From the IMG/VR virus record IMGVR_UViG_3300046808_001241, positions 62,001 to 126,000 of that record: a stretch of 64,000 bases of DNA; one strand, 5' to 3'. Below are positions 2,829 to 55,453 of this stretch, one piece after another. The translations under genes were made by a program, and so were the position numbers. The notes under the pieces are model-generated. The model saw nothing but the letters and a program-made list of their open reading frames with translations, ran no database searches and was not told the origin of the DNA. Within the stretch, counting starts at the first letter, position 1. Each line of letters opens with the position of its first letter.

Positions 2829-3476
2829 ATGGAACTACTTAAAAAAGCTAACGGTAATATCACTCGCACAGCGGAAGAAAAAGCTCAGATGATCGAGCGC
2901 GCTGCTGAATATTATGGAAAATTTTTGACAGCTTTGGGATTCGATTGGGCAGCAGATCCTCATTCAGCAAACACTCCTAAAAGAGTAGCTAAAGCTTGGG
3001 TTAATGATTTGATTTCCGGTTCAATTAGCCCAGAGCCTGAAGTTACAGCATTTCCTAATGATGAAGGTTATACGGGCCTGATTTGTCAAACACGTATTCC
3101 TGTTGTTAGTATGTGTGCTCATCACAATTTGACGTTTCACGGTGTGTGTCACGCGGCATATATTCCAGGCAAAAATAAGACAGACATGGTTATTGGGTTG
3201 AGCAAACTAAATCGTATCGTGGACTTCTATTCCAGACGACCAAACATTCAGGAAAGTCTAACAAAGCAAATTCACGATCATCTAGATAAACTGTGCGTAG
3301 GCAATCGTGGAGTGGCATGCATTATAGAAAGCCAACATTTTTGTGTAAAATGCAGAGGAGTCAAGAACGATAGTGTTATGAAAACTTCGCAATTATCGGG
3401 TTATTTCCACACCAACGAGGTCGGAAGCCGAGTAGAACTATTTAATCTTATAGACCAGAGTAGATTTGGATCGTGA
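2829..3476 (+). CDS. folE: GTP cyclohydrolase I
   Basis: TPKRVAK, SMCAHH, GLSKLNR, RRPNIQE, H.CVKCRGV motifs. Confidence 0.95.
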   Translation: MELLKKANGNITRTAEEKAQMIERAAEYYGKFLTALGFDWAADPHSANTPKRVAKAWVNDLISGSISPEPEVTAFPNDEGYTGLICQTRIPVVSMCAHHNLTFHGVCHAAYIPGKNKTDMVIGLSKLNRIVDFYSRRPNIQESLTKQIHDHLDKLCVGNRGVACIIESQHFCVKCRGVKNDSVMKTSQLSGYFHTNEVGSRVELFNLIDQSRFGS

Positions 3477-3517
3477 CATTGACCTTATTTAAAAAACTAA
3501 TAAACTTATTTAAAAAT

Positions 3518-3976
3518 ATGATTACAGAAGGAAATTTAGCAACCGCTCAATTAGCACAAATGTTTGGATCTGAACTTTTGAAAGTACAAAAGAGTTCACA
3601 AACCGATTCCGGATCAGTTCCAAATATCGTTAGATTGGATCCAAAGCAGTTTCTTTATAATGAAGCACATGTTTCAAACCAAAGGAGAGCTGAAGAACAA
3701 CGAATTATTCAAGCATTACAGAGGGAGGCAGAAGCTGCGTATCCTATTGTAGAAGCTCAGCTTCCACCACAAGAACAACCTCCCCAGTCACAAAGGCAAG
3801 AAGTTCCAATCCAGATCCAACCTTCCCCCACTCAGCAGGCAACGACCGCCAAACTTTCTTCAGCTAAAGGGGATGTTTGGGCATCAATTGCTGGTAGTTT
3901 GGAGCGTATCGCTAATAGTTTAGAGCGCGTTGATGTTTCTGTAAAAAAGAAGAGAATGAAACGAGCCACTAAATGA
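3518..3976 (+). CDS. hypothetical protein, Q/P-rich centre
   Basis: ORF fills the gap between folE and the clamp gene; ATG at 3518 preferred over GTG 3473. Confidence 0.55.
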   Translation: MITEGNLATAQLAQMFGSELLKVQKSSQTDSGSVPNIVRLDPKQFLYNEAHVSNQRRAEEQRIIQALQREAEAAYPIVEAQLPPQEQPPQSQRQEVPIQIQPSPTQQATTAKLSSAKGDVWASIAGSLERIANSLERVDVSVKKKRMKRATK

Positions 3977-4701
3977 AGCTCGTTATTAACAAATCTCAAT
4001 TCGTAGAAAGCATTCTTGCTCCAGTATCGAAGCTAGCTGACAACTTGCTTTTGGATTTTACTACTTCCGAAACGAATGGAATGTATGCAAAGACTTTTGT
4101 CAGCTCTGCAGACAATTCCATGATTTTAATGGCTAAAATTCCTTGCAAAGCTGACGATCATTACAAATGTGTTATTCCAGACTGTAAAACGTTTTTACGT
4201 TTGTTTTCCGGTGTAGAAAAAGAAAACATTGCTCTTGATATTGATACAAACGTTATCAAATACAAAGATAATTCGTTTTCCTTCAAATATCATCTTCTAG
4301 ACGAATCCTATATTGTTAATAAAAAGTCGATATCCGAAGAAAAGATTAATGGGCTAGAATTTGATACTACCTTTACTATAACAAAACAAAAGCTTTCTGA
4401 AATTATAAAATTTAATTCCATCGTACCAGATGCAGAAAAGCTTTATTTCTTGACTGACGGAAACAAAGTATTTGCGAAACTTGGAGACGAACAAAAATCA
4501 AATACGAATGAGATTGTTACAGAATTGGCTGAGTCTTTTCAAGGACAGTCTTTAATTGAATCGTTTCCTATCAATATTCAAAATATCTTGTTGTTTTCAT
4601 TTTGTTCTGATGAAATCGAAATTTCAGTAAATCAACAACTTAAAGTGTTTCAATTCAAGACTCCTAATCTCAAGTATATTGTGTCTGGACTTGTAAAATA
4701 A
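3973..4701 (+). CDS. gp45: DNA polymerase sliding clamp (gp45/PCNA-like)
   Basis: 242 aa, MKLVINK start, alternating beta/alpha two-domain pattern, F..Y.L.D.S segment, replication context. Confidence 0.6.
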   Translation: MKLVINKSQFVESILAPVSKLADNLLLDFTTSETNGMYAKTFVSSADNSMILMAKIPCKADDHYKCVIPDCKTFLRLFSGVEKENIALDIDTNVIKYKDNSFSFKYHLLDESYIVNKKSISEEKINGLEFDTTFTITKQKLSEIIKFNSIVPDAEKLYFLTDGNKVFAKLGDEQKSNTNEIVTELAESFQGQSLIESFPINIQNILLFSFCSDEIEISVNQQLKVFQFKTPNLKYIVSGLVK

Positions 4702-8027: not shown

Positions 8028-10148
8028 ATGGCAAGAACTATTACATCACCCGGCGTACAGATTACCGAAAAGGATCTTTCTTTAAGAATTGAAACTCCTG
8101 CTGGAACAAACGTTATTGTTCCTGGGTTTGCTACTCAAGGTCCAATTTCTGAACCACTTTTCATTACAACAGCAAGCGAGCTTGAAGCAATTTACGGCAT
8201 TCCCACGACACCTGCAGAGCGTTACTTTTATTATTCTTGCAAAGAAGTTTTAAATTCACCTGCAGTACTTACAACGTTGCGTTTGCCATATGGTGCTGAT
8301 ACAGGTTCTGCTTATTCCAAATCTTATAGCGCTCTATTTTACCCAATGCTTTCTTCGAGCGCTAATCCTTCAGTTTCAGCTGAATGGGAAATCGGAGCTC
8401 CGACTCATGTTTCGTTAACTCCTTCGCAATATACAAAAATCGTAGAAGGAAACTTTATTTGGACTGGAACAGAAGATGCTTTAGTCAGCAATTTAAGTGC
8501 AGACGCAGAAGTTTCAGCAGGTTTTATTATTTTAAACGACCTTCAAACGACAGTTAATGAAGTTGCAGAAGGATATTACATAGGGTTTGCTGATAACAAA
8601 TCGGTGTCTACGTCATCGCCAAATTTTGAATCAATCTTAGCAGTAACCACTCTTTCGGGAGATAATAACTATTTAAATGTAGCTACATCCCGTTTCGATT
8701 TCGCTTTATCGGCAACGGTTGATGACTCAAACAGAGGACTTCTTTCAATTTCAGAAACCCTCGAAAAGGTTGGATTTATTGGATTTGAAACAACCGAATA
8801 TCAAGACCATCTTTCTTTAGGCGTCTTCCGCGTTCGTAGATCCACTGCCGATTCTTCCCTTCTTTCACTTGCTACTACAGAAAAATATCTCGGCTCATTT
8901 GATTCAAACAGAAAGCAAGTCAGTCCAACAGGAGGAATTTTAGCCTCTTCGTTTATTGAAGATAAAATCAACAGCGCTTCTCCAACAATTAAAATTGTAA
9001 TAAACCCAACTATTTCAAAAAACTTTGATTGGACAACTAACTCAACCCTTCCTACTTCACGTGTAACCGTTGCAGACGATGCAAAAGGACTTTTCCCGGT
9101 TGGCGTATACGTTCCAGATAGCAGAATGGTTGAAGCAACAAAGATCATCGGCAACGTTCCAGGAAAACTTAACAAATCCTTAAGAACGCTTGAAACATTA
9201 GAAGATTCGGTAGTTGACGTCTTAGTAGATGGCGGATTATCGACAATTTACTCAGTAACTGAGTACGCTACATCTTTGTCATTTAATGATGAAACTTTCG
9301 TAGATTCTCCAAGTTCTGTACAACTCAATTGGCAAGCAGTTGCCAACGAACTTGTGAATTTTTCGCAAAATACACGCAAAGATTGTATGACTATCGTGGA
9401 TCCCGCAAGATCGATCTTTATTTCAGGCAGAGATTCAAAGGTAATTGATGGTGAAGACAAAACATTTACACTAGACATTTACAATCATTTAAGATCTTCC
9501 GTTGGAACATTTGAATCCAACTACGCAGCTACATATGGTAACTGGGTAAAAGTTCCAGACCTCTTTACTGGACGTAATATGTGGATGCCATTTTCTGGTT
9601 ACGCAGCAGCAATTTATGCAAGAAGCGATGCAGCAGCAAATACATGGGCTGCTCCAGCTGGTTTGACAAGAGGAGTGTTCAATGTACTTGATATTGCGTT
9701 CAACCCAAATCAAAAACAACGCGATCGCTTATATGAAATTTCAGTCAACCCTGTAGTTTTCTTTACAAACGAAGGCTTTTCTGTAATGGGTCAAAAGACC
9801 CTTCAAACTCGCCCAACTGCATTCGATAGAATTAACGTACGCAGATTGTTTCTAACTTTGGAAAGAGCCGTGCAAAGAACGTTAAAGTACTTTGTATTCG
9901 AACCCAATACAGATTTTACTCGTAACAGACTCAAGAACACAATTACTCCAATTTTCGAGTACGCTAAAAACACTGAAGGTCTTTATGATTATTTGATTGT
10001 TTGTGATGAAAGAAACAACACTCCAGATACAATTGATAACAACGAATTAATTGTCGATATTTACTTGAAGCCTGTAAGAACAGCAGAATTCTTGCTGGTA
10101 AACTTTATTGCAACTCGCACAGGACAAAACTTCCAAGAACTAATTTAA
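8028..10148 (+). CDS. gp18: tail sheath protein
   Basis: SPGVQITEKDLS start, W.APAGLTRG, VNPV..F..EG..V.GQKTL, RINVRRLF. Confidence 0.95.
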   Translation: MARTITSPGVQITEKDLSLRIETPAGTNVIVPGFATQGPISEPLFITTASELEAIYGIPTTPAERYFYYSCKEVLNSPAVLTTLRLPYGADTGSAYSKSYSALFYPMLSSSANPSVSAEWEIGAPTHVSLTPSQYTKIVEGNFIWTGTEDALVSNLSADAEVSAGFIILNDLQTTVNEVAEGYYIGFADNKSVSTSSPNFESILAVTTLSGDNNYLNVATSRFDFALSATVDDSNRGLLSISETLEKVGFIGFETTEYQDHLSLGVFRVRRSTADSSLLSLATTEKYLGSFDSNRKQVSPTGGILASSFIEDKINSASPTIKIVINPTISKNFDWTTNSTLPTSRVTVADDAKGLFPVGVYVPDSRMVEATKIIGNVPGKLNKSLRTLETLEDSVVDVLVDGGLSTIYSVTEYATSLSFNDETFVDSPSSVQLNWQAVANELVNFSQNTRKDCMTIVDPARSIFISGRDSKVIDGEDKTFTLDIYNHLRSSVGTFESNYAATYGNWVKVPDLFTGRNMWMPFSGYAAAIYARSDAAANTWAAPAGLTRGVFNVLDIAFNPNQKQRDRLYEISVNPVVFFTNEGFSVMGQKTLQTRPTAFDRINVRRLFLTLERAVQRTLKYFVFEPNTDFTRNRLKNTITPIFEYAKNTEGLYDYLIVCDERNNTPDTIDNNELIVDIYLKPVRTAEFLLVNFIATRTGQNFQELI

Positions 10149-35829: not shown

Positions 35830-36723
35830 ATGGCAGATCTTAAAATATCAGAACTTACCTTAGCTACAACTGTTTCTGGAACAGATGTTGTAGCGATTGT
35901 TAATCAAGGAATTACTAAAAAAGCAACTCTTGATACGCTTTTCAACGCCTCAAGTGCTTCTTATGCTCCATATATCCAGCAAGTAGTACAACCTGTTTCG
36001 ACTTTAGTTCAAACAAATTCTGCAGCATGGAATTATGCATATGTTCAAGTAAACACAAATGCAGCAGAATGGACTGATCACGTTATTTCAAACGAAAACG
36101 TAGCAATTGGGCCATTGAATATGGAACTAATTACTACAGGACATAAAAATACATCAGTTGGAGTAAAAGCTCTTTCTGCGATAACAGTAGGTTCAGGAAA
36201 CGTAGCTGTTGGTTATCAATCTTTATTTTCAACAACATCGGGAAGTGGAAATACAGCAGTTGGTTATAATGCTGGTTATGCAAATGTGGTTGGAGTTAAC
36301 AATACATACATTGGCAATCAAGCAACTGGTAATTGTCCTGATGAGTCAAATGTTATTACTTTAGGAAACTCATCCATTAAAACGCTTCGCTGCCAAGCTG
36401 CAACCATTACTAGCATTTCAGATGCAAGAGATAAAAAAGATATTGTTCCTTTAGAAGTTGGTTTAGATTTTATTAACTCATTGCATCCTGTTGAGTTTAC
36501 ATGGAATATGAGAGATGGAGGTAAAACCAAAACCAAAGACATCGGCTTTATAGCTCAACAATTACTTCAAGCTCAAGAAGAAACGACTCACACTATTCCT
36601 GGTCTCGTTAACGATGCAAATACAGAACATTTGGAAGCTTCTTATGGAAAATTAATTCCTGTGTTAGTCAAAGCAATTCAAGAACTTGCACAAGAAGTCA
36701 AAGAGCTTAAAAAAGTTCGATAG
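35830..36723 (+). CDS. tail fibre/spike with a C-terminal intramolecular chaperone (peptidase S74-like)
   Basis: MADLKISEL start, N.AVG...L..NT.G repeats, SDARDKKDI..L.P.EF.W..GFIAQ. Confidence 0.85.
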   Translation: MADLKISELTLATTVSGTDVVAIVNQGITKKATLDTLFNASSASYAPYIQQVVQPVSTLVQTNSAAWNYAYVQVNTNAAEWTDHVISNENVAIGPLNMELITTGHKNTSVGVKALSAITVGSGNVAVGYQSLFSTTSGSGNTAVGYNAGYANVVGVNNTYIGNQATGNCPDESNVITLGNSSIKTLRCQAATITSISDARDKKDIVPLEVGLDFINSLHPVEFTWNMRDGGKTKTKDIGFIAQQLLQAQEETTHTIPGLVNDANTEHLEASYGKLIPVLVKAIQELAQEVKELKKVR

Positions 36724-36754
36724 TTGACATTAAAACAATGTATTGGATTATAAA
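36724..36754 (+). promoter_or_regulatory. sigma70-type promoter
   Basis: TTGACA-19-TATAAA, 6 nt before ATG 36761. Confidence 0.5.
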
Positions 36755-36760
36755 AGTCCA

Positions 36761-36982
36761 ATGAACACATACATTAAACCAATCGAACACATCACTGGAC
36801 GCAAAACCCAACTCGACTCTGGACTTACAGTTGCTCGTAAGATCAAGATGATTAGTCGTCACTTGAATCCCTCGAAGTACGAGTTTCTCGGCTTCCTTGA
36901 TCGTACCAATGAGGCCATTCTTCGTCCTCGTTACCACAACGTCCGCAACTCCCTCGGTCAGTTTGCGCCAGTTGCAGAGTAA
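36761..36982 (+). CDS. small basic hypothetical protein in its own transcription unit
   Basis: Flanked by a promoter and a terminator; C-ending codon bias. Confidence 0.6.
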   Translation: MNTYIKPIEHITGRKTQLDSGLTVARKIKMISRHLNPSKYEFLGFLDRTNEAILRPRYHNVRNSLGQFAPVAE

Positions 36983-36999
36983 TAGAAAATAAACCTAAA

Positions 37000-37040
37000 A
37001 AAAAAGACCCTTTGCTGTTGCATTGGGTCTTTTTTCTTTT
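37000..37040 (+). terminator. intrinsic terminator (probably bidirectional)
   Basis: aaaaaagaccc / gggtctttttt inverted repeat with T and A tracts. Confidence 0.7.
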
Positions 37041-37052
37041 ATACTAGAAGAG

Positions 37053-37397
37053 ATGACTACAAACATTATCGTAAAATTGCAGTACGAAGCCCTTCATAAT
37101 TGGCCAGGAGTCGTTAATGTATTGCCTGACAAGCCTTGGATTCACATGCTTAAAGACAAGCATCGACATATATTTCATATTACTTTGGAAAAACAAGTAA
37201 CTCACTCCGATAGAGATGTTGAAATTATTTTGTTTAAACAGGAAGTGCTTCGCAAGCTTGAAGTATTTTTTGGAAGACCAGGAGATTTAGGTGCAATGTC
37301 CTGTGAAATGCTTGCAGAGCAGCTTCTGAAAGAATATGATTGCAATTCAGTAGAAGTGCTTGAAGATAACGAAAACGGAGCTAAAGTCTATAAATGA
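37053..37397 (+). CDS. queD: QueD/PTPS-like T-fold protein
   Basis: LHNWP, HRHIFH Zn-histidines, SCE.LAE, VEV.ED.ENGA; ATG at 37053. Confidence 0.65.
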   Translation: MTTNIIVKLQYEALHNWPGVVNVLPDKPWIHMLKDKHRHIFHITLEKQVTHSDRDVEIILFKQEVLRKLEVFFGRPGDLGAMSCEMLAEQLLKEYDCNSVEVLEDNENGAKVYK

Positions 37398-37810
37398 TTT
37401 CATTCGTCTGTGGTCAGCTTTGTTCTGGTAAAACTCTTTATTCTAGAGCTCTTGCGCATACGTCATCAGCTCATTATGTAGAAGTCGGAGATGTGGTGAG
37501 AATGATAAAAATTAGTCAAGATCGCAAGGTACTTCAAAACTCAAAAGAGCTATCCGGAGCAATTGTAAATTGGATTAAGAAAAGTTGTAATGAACACACG
37601 GAGCTTGTTGTATCTGGTGTACGTCAAAAAGAAATTTTGGAAAATTTTCCAAATTCTACTTTACTTTGGATCGAATGTCCGATTAATACTAGAAAAGAGC
37701 GATATCAAAAGCGTGCTCGTGTTGGAGATACGCAAACGTTTGAAGAAGCGGAACAAGGAGATATCAATCTTGGAATAATTGACGTCAGAAATTATATTTT
37801 TAGTAAATGA
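37394..37810 (+). CDS. P-loop nucleotide kinase (adenylate/dephospho-CoA kinase-like)
   Basis: GQLCSGKT, GD.VR, SGVR, R..R lid. Confidence 0.75.
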   Translation: MISFVCGQLCSGKTLYSRALAHTSSAHYVEVGDVVRMIKISQDRKVLQNSKELSGAIVNWIKKSCNEHTELVVSGVRQKEILENFPNSTLLWIECPINTRKERYQKRARVGDTQTFEEAEQGDINLGIIDVRNYIFSK

Positions 37811-38598
37811 AATTCTATTGCATACCACCTAATAACCACTTAGATTTGATGGATCAGTCAGAAAGATATTTTGGTCTTGCTCATCTATATCATCAAAACG
37901 AAAAATACAAGAGACATTTTTTAGCACTTCGTAACAGAAGTCCGAAAGTATGGATAACCATGGATTGCGGAAGTGCAGAACATAGTCTTGTTACAGAAGA
38001 TGTTTTGCTAAATATTGTTGCAGAACTCAAGCCAGACGAAGTAATTGCTCCAGATGTTTTGTTTAATAAAGACGAAACACTGAAGAACTTTAAATCGTTT
38101 GTACAAAAAATGTATAACAAAGGTCTTTTGTCGCACACCTCGATATTTGCTTGTCCTCAAGGTTCTAATAAAGAAGAATGGCTGGAGTGTTATTATCAAA
38201 TGGTTGTTAGTCCTTTCGTAAAATGCATTGGTCTTAGTAAAATTGCAGTCCCAAAATGCTGGAATGATGCAGAAGGAGATATAATGATTGGAGTGTCTAG
38301 AAACCAATGTGTAAAGGAACTAATCGACAAACAATGGCTCATTAAACCTCTACATCTTCTTGGAATGGGAGAACATGATGAATTTGAATACTATTTGAAA
38401 AACAGAGTTCCAAACATTCGTAGTTCTGATAGTTGTTACACAGTTCTTGCTGCGATGAACGGTATTGATTTTGAGAGTGGAGATACTTCAAGAGTGCCTA
38501 CAACGAATGCTTACTTTGATGCAACTCTTACAGAAGAACAAGTAAAAATTGCTAAAAAGAACTTTAACTATCTAAAAAACAAATACAAAGACGTATGA
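37807..38598 (+). CDS. TGT/DpdA-like TIM-barrel transglycosylase
   Basis: MDCG (compare DSG), PDV, PQG, LHLLGMG, SSDS motifs in TGT order; adjacent to QueD-like gene. Confidence 0.6.
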   Translation: MKFYCIPPNNHLDLMDQSERYFGLAHLYHQNEKYKRHFLALRNRSPKVWITMDCGSAEHSLVTEDVLLNIVAELKPDEVIAPDVLFNKDETLKNFKSFVQKMYNKGLLSHTSIFACPQGSNKEEWLECYYQMVVSPFVKCIGLSKIAVPKCWNDAEGDIMIGVSRNQCVKELIDKQWLIKPLHLLGMGEHDEFEYYLKNRVPNIRSSDSCYTVLAAMNGIDFESGDTSRVPTTNAYFDATLTEEQVKIAKKNFNYLKNKYKDV

Positions 38599-39269
38599 GT
38601 AAACTGTTAATTGTCACTTGCACACAAGCAAAAACCGATAAAGAATTTGAAGTTAGACCGATTTTTCATAGTCTAAGAAAACAGTTTGAATCAAATAAAC
38701 AAGTAGAGTTTCACATCTTTAAAGACAATCAAAGGGGTCTTTCTCAATGTTACAATGAGATTTTAAAAGATCCTGATCACATCGACAAAACTGCTTTGTT
38801 TGTGCATGATGATGTAGTGTTAGAAGATTTGTTCTTATACGAAAAACTTATTAATAGTCCGTATTCTATTACCGGCCTTGCTGGCGCTAAAACCTTCAAT
38901 AAAGCGAATGACAAGCTAGCCTGGCACCTTGCTGCAGATCGTTCAAGTTATGTGGGAGAGGTTTGTCATGTAACTAAAGACAGAGGTGTTTGGACAACAT
39001 GTTTTGGGCCAACAAATTCAAGAGCCCTTACACTAGACGGCTTGTTCATTTCTTGTAAAGTTAAAGATCTTGTGGAAAAGGAATTGTATTTTGATGAGAG
39101 CTTTGCTTTTCACTTCTATGATTTGTCTTTTTGTATGAGAGCTCATGAAAAGAAAGTTACATGCGGCGTATTGTCTATTCGAGCAGTTCATAGTGGTCTT
39201 GGAGATTCTATGTTGACGCCAGAATGGGAAAAACAAAATATATTGTTTAAAGAAAAATACTGCAAATGA
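38595..39269 (+). CDS. GT-A fold glycosyltransferase
   Basis: GLSQCYN, FVHDD, GLAG, LDGLFI, FDE.F.FHFYD.SFC, H.G. Confidence 0.8.
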   Translation: MSKLLIVTCTQAKTDKEFEVRPIFHSLRKQFESNKQVEFHIFKDNQRGLSQCYNEILKDPDHIDKTALFVHDDVVLEDLFLYEKLINSPYSITGLAGAKTFNKANDKLAWHLAADRSSYVGEVCHVTKDRGVWTTCFGPTNSRALTLDGLFISCKVKDLVEKELYFDESFAFHFYDLSFCMRAHEKKVTCGVLSIRAVHSGLGDSMLTPEWEKQNILFKEKYCK

Positions 39270-39796
39270 TTTTAACCAACAAACAAATAACAGCTATTAC
39301 TAACGAAGGTGCTTATGAATGCCTTTTTTCAAAACAAAGGTTTTCGACTGCTTTTTTTGAAGATCCTTCACCGCTGGGAAGCATTATCGTATTTGAGACT
39401 CCTGTAAAAATTGGTCCTGTGAGTTTTGAACGCTCGTTAGTTATTTGTGGAGAGCTTCCAAATACTAATATATTTGGTGGAGTTTGCTTTCAAAGACTTT
39501 ATTCAGCGCAACTTGGTTCAATTCTTTCGAATTTCTTAGAAAAGCAATGCTATGTTAACGAAAATTGTTTGTTTGTTGAACAAGAACAAACATCGATTAC
39601 GGTAGTCAATCAATTAAAATCTAGTATTATGTTTCATATTTTCCTTCCAATCGTTGTTAGTAAAGAAGGAACTAAAGGACTCTATGAAATTAAATTAGAA
39701 GAAGATAGCATGCAAGAGTTTAAAGAACATTGTGTAAATTCTTTTCATCACCTAACAAAAAGTTTGTTTCTAGAAACTCAGCGTGACAACATTTGA
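39266..39796 (+). CDS. divergent DUF366-like (BPL/LplA-fold) protein
   Basis: F....F...P.G.I..F..P, E.P.....GG..FQRL pattern; recalled similarity only. Confidence 0.45.
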   Translation: MILTNKQITAITNEGAYECLFSKQRFSTAFFEDPSPLGSIIVFETPVKIGPVSFERSLVICGELPNTNIFGGVCFQRLYSAQLGSILSNFLEKQCYVNENCLFVEQEQTSITVVNQLKSSIMFHIFLPIVVSKEGTKGLYEIKLEEDSMQEFKEHCVNSFHHLTKSLFLETQRDNI

Positions 39797-40133
39797 TTAT
39801 ATCAAAGACATCATCATAACCAAACGAGGAGACTTGCCTTTAGATGGGTATGCACCATTTTTAATAAATCGATTTTTATCGTTTATTAATCCTCAAGTTT
39901 GTGAAGCAGTTAATCAACTAAATACCAAAATACTATTAGAAGACAAATTGCTGCACTATAAGCTAATGCTGTCATTGTTTCCAAAGATGAGTTCTGTACC
40001 TTATATTAAATACGTTAAAAAGGTCCAAGAAGAGAAAGATGAGAATCAAGAACTAAAAACTAAAATAAAAGTTCTTGCTCAAAACATGGAACTTTCGGAA
40101 AGAGAAGTTACTACTTTGCTTTCTTCTTTTTAG
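39783..40133 (+). CDS. gp62: clamp loader small subunit (gp62-like)
   Basis: FDYI..I, Y.PFLINRFLS, N.LN, H/Q-Y..L..L.PK..Y.K. Confidence 0.7.
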   Translation: MTTFDYIKDIIITKRGDLPLDGYAPFLINRFLSFINPQVCEAVNQLNTKILLEDKLLHYKLMLSLFPKMSSVPYIKYVKKVQEEKDENQELKTKIKVLAQNMELSEREVTTLLSSF

Positions 40134-40668
40134 CTTCTTCTTTTTCTTTGCGCATTTTTTCTAATTTTTCGCGATCCTTTTTCAGTTGAGGATTGCGTTC
40201 GCTTTCGTCATGAAACGCACCCTTCATGTCATATTCTTTTTTCTTTTCGGAAATAACTCTGCTGAAAAGATCTTTAAAAGTCAAACCTTCTTTCTTTAAG
40301 AAATCAGGTTTCTTTTTAGATTTATCTGCAACAGCCTTTTTCATTGACTCCTTTTTATTGCCATCTTTATCAACATCCATGTAATCTGGTTTGGCTTTCT
40401 TTTTAGCCTCTTCGATGGTTTCTTGATTGTCTTTGCATTCTTCGCAGCCAGTACAATCACAGCCCTTTGCAGCATGTTTGCAATGCAATTCCTTTGCTCC
40501 TTTGTTAGTAATTACGTTGTATGCTTCAGCAAGCATGTCTTGGTCTTTTGATAATGCAGTGTTACTAAGAATAGGAGCTTGTTCGATCAATTGATCTTTA
40601 GAAGGTTCAACTTTTTTAGTAATGCCTTCGTAAAGTCCAGAAAGAGTTTGAGTGTCTTTAAATACCAT
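40111..40668 (-). CDS. basic hypothetical head-associated protein
   Basis: PDYMDVDKDGNKKESMKKA motif, CKH..GCDC.GC..C cluster; TAAATA-N6-ATG. Confidence 0.6.
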   Translation of the reverse strand: MVFKDTQTLSGLYEGITKKVEPSKDQLIEQAPILSNTALSKDQDMLAEAYNVITNKGAKELHCKHAAKGCDCTGCEECKDNQETIEEAKKKAKPDYMDVDKDGNKKESMKKAVADKSKKKPDFLKKEGLTFKDLFSRVISEKKKEYDMKGAFHDESERNPQLKKDREKLEKMRKEKEEAKKKKAK

Positions 40669-40718
40669 ATATCTTATTTATCAGTTGAACGGTTATTTTC
40701 TTGGCCTAAATACTGTAT

Positions 40719-41090
40719 ATGCAACAACCACTAGCTCGCGAAAACAACGGTCTTGCTGACCTCGATCCCTATCAAAACTGCCCACTTCCAGAGGATTTTG
40801 AAATTACAGAACTTCTCGGCGATGTAATTCAGGTAGTTTATGCTGATACAGCAGAAGACGGCAGAAGCCTTGTACGCAACGGAATAATTCTTCCAGCAGA
40901 AGTTGTTGACAGCAAAGCCTGGAGAATCGGTAAAGTTATTATGGCTGGTCCAAACACAAAACAAGTAAAAGCTGGACAATACGTCATCTTTCCAGGAGAT
41001 AAAGGAATTAAAGGCATTCAAAAGAACGGAAAAATGAATATCTTCTTAAACGAAGAGAGGATTTTTGGTATTTGCGCTCCAGCTAACTAA
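40719..41090 (+). CDS. groES: GroES-like co-chaperonin
   Basis: LLGD.I.V, GIILP, GKV..AGP...VK.G..V.F, FLNE..I.G. Confidence 0.85.
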   Translation: MQQPLARENNGLADLDPYQNCPLPEDFEITELLGDVIQVVYADTAEDGRSLVRNGIILPAEVVDSKAWRIGKVIMAGPNTKQVKAGQYVIFPGDKGIKGIQKNGKMNIFLNEERIFGICAPAN

Positions 41091-55003: not shown

Positions 55004-55453
55004 CTACAAAAAAAGCGACTTTTCAGTCAAAATTACAAACTGGCAATTATGTTTTTTGCTCCAGCTTTCTGCTGCTTGCCATTTTGCTTGATTCTTAACG
55101 TACTCTGCTTGCTGATAAATTAAACTTTTGGTCTTTCTGTTCTTTTGAACTGGAGGAAGAGTTTGAGAATGAGGTTTAATTTCAATAAGAAATTTTTTAA
55201 ACTCCCCTTGTTTGTCTTTCATCTTCGCATAAAAATCAACGAAGTATCTTGAAATTCTTCCAGTCAATGGATTTTGATATGGAATAATTATTTCTTCTGA
55301 AGACCATTCTAAGACGTTAGGATTAAGATCGAAAAAGCGCATTGCTTTAAGCTCCCAACCACTTCTGTACGTTACATTGCGGTTGTTTCCTTTATATTTT
55401 TCAGGATTGATGAGCGTGTAAATTCCTTGTCTGTATTTTGAATTCTTTTTCAA
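55004..55453 (-). CDS. gp4: head completion nuclease (T4 gp4-like)
   Basis: YRS.WE...F.D.NP..LEWSSEE..IPY, YF.DF, IEIKP, N.AKW.AA. Confidence 0.9.
   Translation of the reverse strand: MKKNSKYRQGIYTLINPEKYKGNNRNVTYRSGWELKAMRFFDLNPNVLEWSSEEIIIPYQNPLTGRISRYFVDFYAKMKDKQGEFKKFLIEIKPHSQTLPPVQKNRKTKSLIYQQAEYVKNQAKWQAAESWSKKHNCQFVILTEKSLFL

What the first reader, a model, noticed from the sequence alone, without database searches (positions are those of the whole stretch)
37053..39796. Candidate new DNA-hypermodification operon: QueD-like + kinase + TGT/DpdA-like + glycosyltransferase + DUF366-like
Seen: five overlapping, translationally coupled ORFs behind one sigma70-like promoter, running into the clamp-loader gene; FolE is at 2829. 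Established: FolE and QueD are the first steps of 7-deazaguanine synthesis, and TGT-fold DpdA enzymes insert 7-deazaguanines into phage DNA as anti-restriction modifications. Inference: a GT-A glycosyltransferase, a nucleotide kinase and a ligase-fold DUF366-like protein inside the cassette suggest a further decorated (for example glycosylated) deazaguanine, a combination I do not recognise from described dPreQ0, dG+, dADG or dPreQ1 clusters. QueE, QueC and QueF/ArcS are not visible in this window.
Basis: partly seen in the sequence, partly recalled or inferred. Interest (0 to 1): 0.85.

Follow-up and report, generated by a model that had tools for sequence, protein, structure and literature searches.

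The report
Phage 7-deazaguanine DNA-modification operon, extended
An uncultured 217-kb T4-like phage carries the gene set known to replace every guanine in a Cellulophaga phage's DNA with 7-deazaguanine, plus a P-loop protein always found with it and two unexplained extra enzymes.

Summary
The five overlapping ORFs are real and conserved. The first three (37053-38598) are syntenic homologues of Cellulophaga phage phiST genes CGPG_00067, 66 and 65. Two of these are DpdL (proposed 7-carboxy-7-deazaguanine decarboxylase) and DpdA3 (a TGT-fold transglycosylase). In phiST all G is replaced by 2'-deoxy-7-deazaguanosine (dDG; PMC10516641).

- **DpdL:** the "QueD-like" ORF has the DpdL motif LxxxHRHxF.
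- **DpdA3:** the model of the 263-aa protein matches only tRNA-guanine transglycosylases.
- **Precursor genes:** FolE is in the window; QueD and QueE lie about 60 kb upstream in the same genome. No QueC was seen in about 101 of 217 kb.

New points:

- **P-loop protein:** the NMP-kinase-like protein sits between DpdL and DpdA3 in every locus found, across three phage lineages.
- **GT-A-like gene:** it occurs only in T4-like relatives, always directly after either this trio or a QueC-glutamine amidotransferase pair (47 of 47 loci with it, 0 of 22 without). That reflects only about two evolutionary events.
- **DUF366-fold gene:** it is absent from 4 of 21 related cassettes and present in phages with no nearby deazaguanine genes.

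A glycosylated deazaguanine remains unproven. This is a new variant of a known kind.

The parts
2829..3476 (+). FolE (GTP cyclohydrolase I), first step towards 7-carboxy-7-deazaguanine (CDG). It lies between a gp32-like gene and a sliding-clamp-like gene.
   Evidence: Pfam PF01227, E 2e-42. It is 49-61% identical to FolE of phiST and MA9V-3. Its neighbours 3473-3976 and 3973-4701 are not QueD or QueE; the 242-aa one matches a PHROG processivity factor.
37000..37046 (+). Intrinsic-terminator-like hairpin with a U-run (37000-37040), overlapped by a sigma70-like promoter: -35-like TTGCAT at 37023-37028 and -10-like TATACT at 37041-37046. The ATG follows 6 nt after the -10 box.
   Evidence: Hairpin dG -19.9 kcal/mol, z -5.7. 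Equivalent hairpins with different stem sequences occur in five relatives (z -5.2 to -7.5). GTTG and TATAnT are invariant across 10 aligned loci. The generic scan did not detect it.
37053..37397 (+). DpdL-like protein. DpdL is a QueD paralogue proposed to decarboxylate CDG to 7-deazaguanine.
   Evidence: 40% identical to phiST CGPG_00067 (DpdL), E 3e-26. PHROG 17812, E 4e-23. The motif LKDKHRHIF fits LxxxHRHxF, and all 8 homologues keep it. No Pfam PTPS hit.
37394..37810 (+). Small P-loop protein, NMP-kinase-like, always found between DpdL and DpdA3.
   Evidence: Walker A GQLCSGKT. Pfam AAA_18, E 2.8e-7. 29% identical to phiST CGPG_00066, E 6e-14. The profile hits PDB SSO1041 (AdkA-like, E 1.4e-5) and UMP/CMP kinase. 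NCBIfam (d)CMP kinase, E 1.7e-4. Present in every DpdA3 locus where the sequence reaches that far.
37807..38598 (+). DpdA3-type transglycosylase with a TGT fold, expected to put the 7-deazaguanine base into DNA in place of G.
   Evidence: 42% identical to phiST CGPG_00065 (DpdA3), tblastn E 1e-52. PHROG 20335, E 2e-58. AlphaFold model pLDDT 89; the top 50 Foldseek PDB hits are all TGT (TM 0.53-0.66, E about 1e-6). No Pfam or PDB hit by sequence alone.
38595..39269 (+). GT-A-like protein of the Glyco_tranf_2_5 family with an invariant HDD motif. Its donor and acceptor are unknown.
   Evidence: Pfam PF13712, E 6.7e-6, 26.4 bits against a cut-off of 27. The homologue in L081 scores 51 bits. More than 271 metagenomic homologues. 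None in GenBank phages or PHROGs. H71, D72 and D73 are invariant.
39266..39796 (+). DUF366-fold protein, related to the class II aaRS / BirA / LplA ligase fold. Function unknown.
   Evidence: Pfam DUF366, E 1.9e-4, below the cut-off. AlphaFold model pLDDT 92.8. Foldseek top hit is 2DDZ (PH0223, DUF366), TM 0.71, followed by biotin and lipoate protein ligases. A profile search links it to proteins that carry PF04017.
39783..40133 (+). Clamp-loader small-subunit-like gene (gp62-like), the last gene of the transcription unit.
   Evidence: PHROG 225, E 3.5e-6. It lies directly downstream of DUF366, or of GT where DUF366 is absent, in nearly all related loci.
40170..40197 (+). Terminator-like hairpin downstream of the gp62-like gene; the likely end of the operon.
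   Evidence: The only + strand terminator-like site that the scan found in 36400-40800.

Best explanation
The operon is the DNA-modification end of a 7-deazaguanine (dDG-type) pathway of the kind shown chemically in Cellulophaga phage phiST. Here it sits in an uncultured T4-like myovirus of about 217 kb.

**Proposed route**
1. FolE (in the window) together with QueD and QueE (about 60 kb upstream in the same genome) make 7-carboxy-7-deazaguanine (CDG) from GTP.
2. The DpdL-like protein removes the carboxyl group to give 7-deazaguanine.
3. The TGT-fold DpdA3 exchanges guanine for this base in phage DNA, which makes the DNA refractory to host restriction enzymes.
4. The small P-loop protein between DpdL and DpdA3 is an obligatory partner of this DpdA3 subfamily. 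Most likely it supplies ATP-dependent help to the transglycosylase, as the ATPase DpdB does for bacterial DpdA. Alternatively it phosphorylates a deazaguanine nucleotide.

**The two extra genes**
- The GT-A-like gene is an accessory of deazaguanine modules that is specific to T4-like phages. Its substrate is unknown.
- The DUF366 ligase-fold gene is a dispensable neighbour, co-transcribed with the clamp-loader subunit. It is probably not an essential part of the pathway.

**Basis of each step**
- Shown here: homology, synteny, folds, the DpdL motif and gene co-occurrence.
- Inferred: all enzyme activities and the presence of dDG in this phage's DNA. The DpdL and DpdA3 activities are themselves only predicted in the literature.
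For: - **Synteny with phages of known or related content.** ORF1-3 are homologous to, and in the same order as, phiST CGPG_00067/66/65 and the equivalent genes of Chryseobacterium phage MA9V-3. PMC10516641 reports about 302,000 dDG per 10^6 nt and no dG in phiST DNA. It names CGPG_00067 DpdL and CGPG_00065 DpdA3.
- **DpdL motif.** LxxxHRHxF is present in all homologues.
- **TGT fold.** The DpdA3 model matches only tRNA-guanine transglycosylases.
- **Precursor genes.** FolE is in the window. QueD (PTPS; 44% identical to phiST QueD) and QueE are in the same genome. That contig is 100% identical to the window over 23 kb of overlap.
- **No QueC.** None was found in the window or in the roughly 37 kb of flanks examined. 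That matches phiST's gene content.
- **Invariant trio.** DpdL, the P-loop protein and DpdA3 occur together in every assessable locus among the 22 T4-like loci, 7 phiST/MA9-like loci and two cultured phage lineages.
- **Precedent for an ATPase partner.** DpdB ATPase activity is necessary for DpdA to insert preQ0 into DNA (PMC10164549). Expressing dpdL and dpdA3 alone in E. coli gave no dDG, and the authors suggest other enzymes may be needed.
- **One transcription unit.** It is bounded by a terminator/promoter composite upstream and a terminator after the gp62-like gene.
Against: - No chemistry exists for this phage.
- DpdL decarboxylase and DpdA3 transglycosylase activities have never been shown in vitro or in a heterologous host.
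- The window DpdL gives no Pfam PTPS hit. My shallow profile comparison with QueD was not significant (probability 1.7%).
- About 116 kb of the genome was not examined, so a QueC, QueF or other tailoring gene could change the end product.
- The P-loop protein's nearest relatives are NMP kinases rather than ParB-like DpdB.
- The GT gene's perfect co-occurrence with deazaguanine genes suggests the true product may not be plain dDG.
Confidence: 0.7

Rival explanations
1. The GT-A-like enzyme and the DUF366 ligase-fold enzyme act on the deazaguanine in DNA, or on its precursor. The result would be a further decorated base, for example a glycosylated or acylated one, that differs from all described 7-deazaguanine derivatives.
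For: - All five genes are translationally coupled in one operon.
- GT orthologues lie directly downstream of a deazaguanine gene set in every case. That set is either DpdL-kinase-DpdA3 or QueC plus a class II glutamine amidotransferase. The count is 47 of 47 loci with GT and 0 of 22 loci lacking those genes.
- GT is kept while its upstream partner module differs, which fits a role shared by deazaguanine pathways.
- From my own knowledge: queuosine in tRNA is glycosylated by GT-A-type enzymes in vertebrates and glutamylated by an aaRS paralogue in bacteria. Such chemistry on 7-deazapurines therefore has precedents.
Against: - 7-deazaguanine, the expected product of DpdL, has no hydroxyl or amine side chain to accept a sugar.
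- The co-occurrence reduces to about 2 state changes on the tree, so it has no statistical weight.
- DUF366 is absent from 4 of 21 cassettes that keep the other four genes.
- phiST and MA9V-3 have the trio without either extra gene.
- GT has no detectable similarity to known DNA glycosyltransferases. The only family hit is Glyco_tranf_2_5, and the only weak PDB hit is 2NXV.
Confidence: 0.2
2. GT and DUF366 have nothing to do with DNA bases. They would belong to a variable glycan or protein-modification island that sits upstream of the clamp-loader small-subunit gene in this phage clade. The deazaguanine trio would simply have inserted into the same hot spot.
For: - In sister loci the genes directly upstream of DUF366 are typical polysaccharide genes: NAD-dependent epimerase/dehydratase, GT2, GT11, methyltransferases, a pyruvyl transferase, an MptE/CST-I-like protein and a 2OG-Fe oxygenase.
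- 19 of 69 loci have DUF366 but no Que, GAT or DpdA3 gene upstream of gp62 in the sequence available (at least 3.2 kb, up to 10 kb).
- DUF366 lies next to gp62 in nearly all of the roughly 100 loci.
- The window phage has a second sugar island between its Mre11-like and Rad50-like genes.
- Homing endonucleases, ThyX and other genes are inserted at this spot in relatives.
Against: - This particular GT family is never seen without GAT or DpdA3 next to it.
- The 4-nt overlaps with DpdA3 are conserved.
- Que genes could lie elsewhere in the genomes that appear to lack them, as QueD and QueE do in this phage.
Confidence: 0.35
3. This is a pre-replicative route. DpdA3 would act on a nucleotide or nucleoside rather than on DNA, and the NMP-kinase-like protein would phosphorylate the resulting 7-deaza-dGMP. 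A 7-deaza-dGTP pool would then be built and used by the phage polymerase, which would explain complete replacement of G.
For: - The P-loop protein's only detectable relatives are nucleoside-monophosphate kinases.
- In phiST/MA9-like phages the trio is always preceded by a MazG-like or dCTP-deaminase/dUTPase-like dNTP hydrolase.
- ThyX is inserted between DpdL and the kinase in some relatives.
- A second kinase-like gene (AAA_28) follows QueD-QueE.
- DpdA3 phages show 100% replacement of G, and the modified nucleoside was reported in the cytoplasm of Campylobacter infected with phage CP220 (PMC10516641).
Against: - All characterised TGT and DpdA enzymes act on polynucleotides.
- PMC10516641 argues for post-replicative insertion.
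- No MazG-like or DCD-like gene was found in the window.
- There is no direct evidence for either route.
Confidence: 0.2

Closest known systems
dDG cluster of Cellulophaga phage phiST (Cbastvirus): FolE, QueD, QueE, MazG-like, DpdL (CGPG_00067), CGPG_00066, DpdA3 (CGPG_00065) (PMC10516641)
   Same: - DpdL, the P-loop protein and DpdA3 are homologous (40%, 29% and 42% identity) and in the same order.
- The DpdL motif LxxxHRHxF is shared.
- FolE, QueD and QueE are present and QueC is not seen.
- The expected product is 7-deazaguanine in DNA.
   Different: - The host phage is a 217-kb T4-like myovirus, not a 79-kb siphovirus.
- The precursor genes are scattered: FolE is 34 kb and QueD/QueE about 60 kb upstream of the cassette.
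- No MazG-like gene lies next to the cassette.
- Two extra genes (GT-A-like and DUF366-fold) follow DpdA3, and the operon runs into a clamp-loader gene.
Chryseobacterium phage MA9V-3 (PV245944) and metagenomic relatives L115-L122: QueD, QueE, FolE, dCTP-deaminase-like, DpdL, kinase, DpdA3
   Same: The same invariant trio occurs in the same order (31-41% identity).
   Different: - DpdL is the C-terminal part of a 293-aa protein in MA9V-3.
- A DCD-like gene precedes the trio.
- There is no GT or DUF366.
- These genes carry no functional annotation, and no chemistry is known.
Bacterial Dpd system: DpdA (TGT-fold) with the DpdB ATPase, which inserts preQ0 into DNA (PMC10164549)
   Same: A TGT-fold transglycosylase is encoded next to an NTP-binding partner protein. 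The product is a 7-deazaguanine in DNA.
   Different: - DpdB is not a small NMP-kinase-like P-loop protein, and no homology to it was found or claimed.
- The substrate there is preQ0 and the modification level is low.
- That system is part of a restriction-modification system, not a phage counter-defence.
Sister T4-like phages (loci L014-L093) with QueD, QueE, AAA_28, QueC, class II glutamine amidotransferase, GT, DUF366, gp62. The QueC + GAT pair resembles the Gat-QueC fusion listed for phage 7-deazaguanine pathways in PMC10516641
   Same: - The GT and DUF366 genes are orthologous to those in the window.
- They sit at the same genomic position upstream of gp62 and the GroES-like gene.
- They belong to the same broad phage clade.
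   Different: - The upstream module is QueC plus GAT instead of DpdL-kinase-DpdA3.
- No DpdA3 homologue lies within 10 kb.
- The likely end product is therefore different.
DUF366 (PF04017), structure 2DDZ (PH0223 of Pyrococcus horikoshii)
   Same: The fold is shared (TM 0.71), as is the distant relation to BirA/LplA ligases.
   Different: - Only 15% identity.
- The Pfam score of the window protein is below the cut-off.
- The function of DUF366 is itself unknown.
- The phage branch has its own invariant motifs (GELPN, FGGVCFQRL, ETQRDN).

Membership tests
DpdL (QueD paralogue, proposed CDG decarboxylase) | Sequence homology to phiST CGPG_00067 | tested here: met
   BLASTP 40% identity over 108 aa, E 3e-26. 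PHROG 17812, E 4e-23.
DpdL (QueD paralogue, proposed CDG decarboxylase) | Motif LxxxHRHxF in place of the QueD motif CxxxHGH | tested here: met
   The window has LKDKHRHIF. All 8 aligned homologues keep LxxxHRHxF. The genome's true QueD has CKYVHGY, like the QueD of phiST.
DpdL (QueD paralogue, proposed CDG decarboxylase) | Occurs with FolE, QueD, QueE and a DpdA, without QueC | tested here: inconclusive
   FolE, QueD and QueE and DpdA3 are present. No QueC was found in about 101 kb examined, but about 116 kb of the genome was not seen.
DpdL (QueD paralogue, proposed CDG decarboxylase) | T-fold / PTPS-family relationship | tested here: inconclusive
   No Pfam PTPS hit at E <= 1. hhalign against a shallow QueD profile gave probability 1.7%. 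The literature reports 99.9% HHpred probability for the phiST protein.
DpdL (QueD paralogue, proposed CDG decarboxylase) | CDG decarboxylase activity | not testable with these tools
   The activity is only predicted, even for phiST.
DpdA3 (DNA guanine transglycosylase subfamily) | Homology to phiST CGPG_00065 | tested here: met
   tblastn 41.7% identity over 241 aa, E 1e-52. PHROG 20335, E 2e-58 over the full length.
DpdA3 (DNA guanine transglycosylase subfamily) | TGT (TIM-barrel) fold | tested here: met
   Model pLDDT 89.2. The top 50 Foldseek PDB hits are all tRNA-guanine transglycosylases, TM 0.53-0.66, E 1e-6 to 1e-5.
DpdA3 (DNA guanine transglycosylase subfamily) | Catalytic aspartates in the positions of the TGT/DpdA nucleophile and general acid | not tested
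   D53, D83, D158 and D208 are invariant in 21 sequences. No residue-level superposition on TGT or DpdA was available.
DpdA3 (DNA guanine transglycosylase subfamily) | Inserts a 7-deazaguanine into DNA | not testable with these tools
   This needs nucleoside LC-MS/MS or an enzyme assay.
P-loop NMP-kinase-like proteins | Walker A motif and similarity to an NMP-kinase core | tested here: met
   GQLCSGKT. AAA_18, E 2.8e-7, above the cut-off. The profile hits PDB 3LW7/3H0K (E 1.4e-5) and UMP/CMP kinase 1QF9 (E 0.0045).
P-loop NMP-kinase-like proteins | Membership of a specific named kinase family (equivalog) | tested here: not met
   The best NCBIfam hit is (d)CMP kinase at 21.7 bits, against a cut-off of 102.
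GT-A glycosyltransferase-like (Pfam Glyco_tranf_2_5) | Pfam PF13712 match at the gathering score | tested here: inconclusive
   The window protein scores 26.4 bits against a cut-off of 27. The orthologue in L081 scores 51 bits. Most close homologues carry a precomputed PF13712 hit.
GT-A glycosyltransferase-like (Pfam Glyco_tranf_2_5) | Acidic DxD-type metal and nucleotide-sugar binding motif | tested here: met
   H71, D72 and D73 are invariant in 17 sequences down to 29% identity.
GT-A glycosyltransferase-like (Pfam Glyco_tranf_2_5) | Glycosyl transfer, and the identity of the acceptor | not testable with these tools
   No characterised close relative exists. The only PDB sequence hit is the uncharacterised 2NXV/2QGI, E 0.18.
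DUF366 (PF04017) | Pfam match at the gathering score | tested here: not met
   21.4 bits against a cut-off of 29.9, E 1.9e-4.
DUF366 (PF04017) | Fold of the family's solved structure (2DDZ) | tested here: met
   Foldseek top hit is 2DDZ, E 2e-8, TM 0.71-0.72. BirA and LplA ligases follow.
DUF366 (PF04017) | Profile-level link to bona fide PF04017 proteins | tested here: met
   A profile of the phage branch finds P0188 and P0204 (E 1e-21 and 3e-13), which carry PF04017.

The most novel reading that the evidence does not exclude
Two linked novelties remain possible.

1. The small P-loop protein that always sits between DpdL and DpdA3 may be the missing component that makes DpdA3 work. It could be an ATP-driven partner or a deaza-dGMP kinase. 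Complete replacement of G by a 7-deazapurine would then run by a mechanism not yet described.
2. The GT-A-like enzyme, with or without the DUF366 ligase-fold enzyme, may convert the inserted deazapurine into a new hypermodified base. This base would be shared by T4-like phages that carry either the DpdA3 module or the QueC-amidotransferase module.
Probability: 0.25. Interest if true: 0.85.

Novelty: new variant of a known kind. Interest (0 to 1): 0.6.

Why it matters
7-deazaguanine DNA modifications are a major phage counter-defence against restriction enzymes. The DpdA3 subfamily is the only one that replaces every G, yet it has resisted reconstitution in E. coli.

This locus and its relatives extend the dDG-type system from a few Bacteroidota phages to an abundant, uncultured clade of large T4-like phages. 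The DpdA3-like protein has more than 349 metagenomic homologues.

The comparison gives a testable reason for the failed reconstitution. A conserved P-loop partner was left out of those experiments.

It also singles out two uncharacterised enzyme families, Glyco_tranf_2_5-like and DUF366, as candidates for new steps in deazapurine chemistry. For DUF366, a family with a solved structure but no function, the phage context is one of the few functional leads, although a weak one.

Tried and rejected
- **Genes coupled to FolE.** I tested whether 3473-3976 and 3973-4701 are QueD and QueE. They are not: there are no Pfam hits, and the 242-aa protein matches a PHROG DNA polymerase processivity factor.
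- **Que genes in the window.** I searched the window and the close relatives with 114 QueD, QueE, QueC, GAT and FolE proteins from related phages. Only FolE was found. One antisense hit was an artefact of an ORF overlapping FolE in L083.
- **DNA-level search.** The cassette gave no match against GenBank phages. GT and DUF366 have no protein-level relatives there either. The single DUF366 hit, in 'Microcystis phage MaAM05', lies in DNA that looks bacterial (SecF, GlyS, MtgA, FliM), so I set it aside.
- **MA9V-3 genes after DpdA3.** I tested whether the 211-aa and 173-aa genes there are diverged GT and DUF366. There is no similarity.
- **Hidden DpdA in QueC-GAT-GT-DUF366 loci.** Profile comparison of six recurrent unknown gene clusters with the DpdA3, kinase, DpdL and DUF366 profiles found only a P-loop match (AAA_28 cluster against the kinase, 72%). 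No DpdA was found.
- **Profile searches of PDB by sequence.** The DUF366, DpdA3 and GT profiles gave nothing significant. Only fold comparison worked.
- **Consensus structure of the upstream hairpin.** RNAalifold predicted no structure because MAFFT misaligned stems of different length. I used single-sequence folds instead.
- **Statistics on GT co-occurrence.** The association between GT and deazaguanine genes is perfect but rests on about 2 changes on the tree, so I rejected it as statistical evidence.
- **Genome walking.** Walking further along the genome stalled. One look-up returned a short contig and one found no record.
- **BFVD fold search.** The DUF366 model gave only weak LplA-like hits.
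- **RNA genes.** Rfam and tRNA scans of the window were empty.

Full report
**1. The observation**

The region holds five + strand ORFs: 37053-37397, 37394-37810, 37807-38598, 38595-39269 and 39266-39796. Each overlaps the next by 4 nt. The last overlaps by 14 nt a 116-aa ORF (39783-40133) that matches PHROG 225, 'clamp loader of DNA polymerase'.

These ORFs are not chance open frames. Twenty other viral or metagenomic loci carry the same genes in the same order, at 39-90% protein identity and with the same overlaps.

FolE at 2829-3476 is confirmed. The window comes from a 217,182-bp IMG/VR contig. A second assembly of 217,042 bp from another sample is identical to the window over 23 kb of overlap and is circularly permuted relative to the first. 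The genome is therefore probably complete. Its major capsid protein is only about 34% identical to those of cyanophage T4-likes, so this is an uncultured, distant T4-like myovirus.

**2. What the first three genes are**

By tblastn, the 263-aa protein finds only Cellulophaga phages of the phiST group and Chryseobacterium phage MA9V-3 among 50,697 GenBank phage records. In both lineages the two genes upstream are homologues of window ORF1 and ORF2.

PMC10516641 shows by LC-MS/MS that phiST DNA contains 2'-deoxy-7-deazaguanosine in place of all dG. It names CGPG_00067 DpdL, a QueD paralogue proposed to decarboxylate 7-carboxy-7-deazaguanine, with LxxxHRHxF replacing the QueD motif CxxxHGH. It names CGPG_00065 DpdA3, a distant TGT/DpdA homologue.

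- **ORF1.** The window protein has LKDKHRHIF, and all eight homologues I aligned keep the motif.
- **ORF3.** Its AlphaFold model (pLDDT 89) matches only tRNA-guanine transglycosylases among the top 50 PDB hits.
- **ORF2.** It is a P-loop protein with Walker A GQLCSGKT and a Pfam AAA_18 hit. Its only recognisable relatives are nucleoside-monophosphate kinases.

**3. The rest of the pathway**

The window holds no QueD, QueE, QueC or amidotransferase. The genes coupled to FolE are not Que genes; the 242-aa one is a sliding-clamp-like gene.

I walked along the identical JGI contig. QueD (Pfam PTPS; 44% identical to phiST QueD) and QueE (best NCBIfam hits are all QueE models) lie about 23 kb before the window start, roughly 60 kb from the cassette. 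An AAA_28 kinase-like gene follows them.

The genome thus has FolE, QueD, QueE, DpdL, the P-loop protein and DpdA3. I saw no QueC in about 101 kb. That is the gene content of phiST. About 116 kb remains unexamined.

**4. A new point: the P-loop protein is a constant member**

PMC10516641 states that homologues of CGPG_00066 were not found in other 7-deazaguanine phages. Among the DpdA3 loci I collected, the order DpdL, P-loop protein, DpdA3 holds wherever the sequence reaches far enough. This covers 22 T4-like loci, 7 phiST/MA9-like metagenomic loci and the two cultured lineages.

Among GenBank phages the P-loop protein has the same narrow distribution as this DpdA3 branch. DpdL homologues are much more widespread, with 29 records. 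The P-loop protein therefore tracks DpdA3, not DpdL.

Bacterial DpdA needs the ATPase DpdB to insert preQ0 into DNA (PMC10164549). Expression of dpdL and dpdA3 alone gave no dDG in E. coli. I therefore think the P-loop protein is most likely the missing partner.

Its kinase-like relatives keep a nucleotide-pool route open as a rival. So do the MazG-like or dCTP-deaminase-like genes that precede the trio in the non-T4 lineages, and the ThyX gene inserted inside the trio in some relatives.

**5. The two extra genes**

*GT.* ORF4 is GT-A-like. It scores just under the Pfam Glyco_tranf_2_5 cut-off, its orthologues score well above it, and the HDD motif is invariant.

*DUF366.* ORF5 has the DUF366 fold. 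Its model has pLDDT 92.8, and the top PDB hit is 2DDZ at TM 0.71, followed by biotin and lipoate protein ligases. Neither gene has a relative in PHROGs or in genuine GenBank phage sequence.

*Wider distribution of DUF366.* A profile search and a scan of viral contigs show that DUF366 genes are common in a broad clade of T4-like phages, with more than 413 contigs. In the 80 loci fetched, the gene lies just upstream of the gp62-like, GroES-like and two further conserved genes, as in the window; in most it directly abuts gp62.

*What lies upstream of DUF366 varies.*
- In 43 of the 80 loci it is an orthologue of the window GT. That GT is preceded by QueC and a class II glutamine amidotransferase, with QueD and QueE some 8 kb further up.
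- In others it is ordinary glycan genes: epimerase/dehydratase, GT2, GT11, methyltransferases, a pyruvyl transferase and a 2OG-Fe oxygenase.
- None of these 80 loci has DpdL, the P-loop protein or DpdA3. Profile comparison found no hidden DpdA among the recurrent unknown genes.

**6. How far the association goes**

I took the 69 loci with at least 3.2 kb upstream of gp62. GT is present exactly when GAT or DpdA3 is present: 47 loci with both and 22 with neither. On a tree built from two neighbouring conserved genes this amounts to only about 2 changes of state. It is a suggestive pattern, not a statistical result.

The informative fact is that GT is retained while the upstream deazaguanine module differs.

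DUF366 behaves differently:
- It is absent from 4 of 21 cassettes that keep DpdL, the P-loop protein, DpdA3 and GT.
- It is present in 19 loci that have no deazaguanine gene upstream of gp62 in the sequence available.

I conclude that GT is plausibly an accessory of deazaguanine pathways. DUF366 is more likely a dispensable neighbour of the clamp-loader gene or part of a variable modification island.

A sugar on 7-deazaguanine itself is chemically awkward, because the base has no side chain.

**7. Transcription**

The generic promoter scan is no better than chance here.

Immediately upstream of ORF1 every relative has a strong hairpin followed by a U-run. In the window the hairpin has dG -19.9 kcal/mol and z -5.7. 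The stem sequences differ between loci while the pairing is kept. An invariant GTTG is followed 16-17 nt later by a TATAnT box, which lies 6 nt before the ATG in the window and about 5-12 nt before it in the relatives.

This looks like the terminator of the upstream 73-aa gene overlapped by a sigma70-like promoter, possibly giving a leaderless or very short-leader mRNA. The only terminator-like site downstream is at 40170-40197, after the gp62-like gene. The unit is therefore six genes.

**8. Verdict**

- This is a 7-deazaguanine DNA-modification operon.
- Its core is the dDG system already described for phiST, not a new combination.
- ORF1 is DpdL rather than QueD.
- New here: the phage lineage, the constancy of the P-loop partner, and the two clade-specific extra genes.
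- Of those two genes, only GT shows a consistent tie to deazaguanine genes.

Novelty: new variant of a known kind. Interest: 0.6.

Noticed in passing
L097:2507-8129 (same genome, about 10-16 kb before the window start): Seven overlapping genes are inserted between the Mre11-like (gp47-like) and Rad50-like (gp46-like) genes. They include GT2-like, Glyco_trans_1_2 and Methyltransf_24 genes. This is a second sugar-modification island in this phage.
   Followed up: no
L098:5563-6234 (same genome) and cluster c10 in L081-type loci: An AAA_28 (NadR-type kinase-like) gene directly follows QueD-QueE, both in this phage and in the QueC-type sister phages (40-43% identity). It may be another unrecognised member of phage deazaguanine clusters.
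   Followed up: partly
window 36761-36982: A 73-aa ORF is conserved upstream of the cassette in relatives (54-72% identity). It is preceded by the best sigma70-like match of the region (36724-36751) and followed by the terminator hairpin. Its function is unknown.
   Followed up: partly
window 37000-37046 and equivalent sites in L008, L009, L099-L104, L111, L114: A terminator hairpin and a promoter share the same 45 nt. The -35-like GTTG lies in the loop and 3' arm of the hairpin, and the stems differ between loci while staying paired.
   Followed up: partly
L102:445-1086, L113:8877-9518; L108:7290-9526: In some relatives other genes are inserted between DpdL and the P-loop gene. One is a ThyX-like gene (judged by eye from a thymidylate-synthase-like motif, not by a family search). 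In L108 the insert is a 548-aa gene plus a 197-aa gene that looks like an HxGH nucleotidyltransferase (also by eye).
   Followed up: no
L002:6647-7528 (Chryseobacterium phage MA9V-3): Here DpdL is the C-terminal third of a 293-aa protein. The N-terminal part of about 178 aa has no Pfam match.
   Followed up: no
L094 (GenBank MW495066, 'Microcystis phage MaAM05', 107519-125938): The only GenBank 'phage' hit to DUF366 lies among SecF, GlyS, MtgA, FabI and FliM genes. This stretch of the record looks like bacterial chromosome rather than phage.
   Followed up: no
window 55004-55453 (- strand); L081-type loci cluster c7; L021:9190-9987: There is a TnsA-like endonuclease gene in the window. Sister loci carry TnsA-like and GIY-YIG/NUMOD3 homing-endonuclease genes, one of them inserted directly between the QueC region and DUF366.
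   Followed up: no
L095:19623-20258 (same genome, about 8 kb beyond the window end): A Sulfotransfer_2 family gene sits in a run of small minus-strand genes.
   Followed up: no
L081-type loci, e.g. L081:8594-8992 and 9027-9296: Two small conserved genes of unknown function (about 126 aa and 87 aa) lie between the amidotransferase and GT in 21-22 loci. No family match was found.
   Followed up: partly
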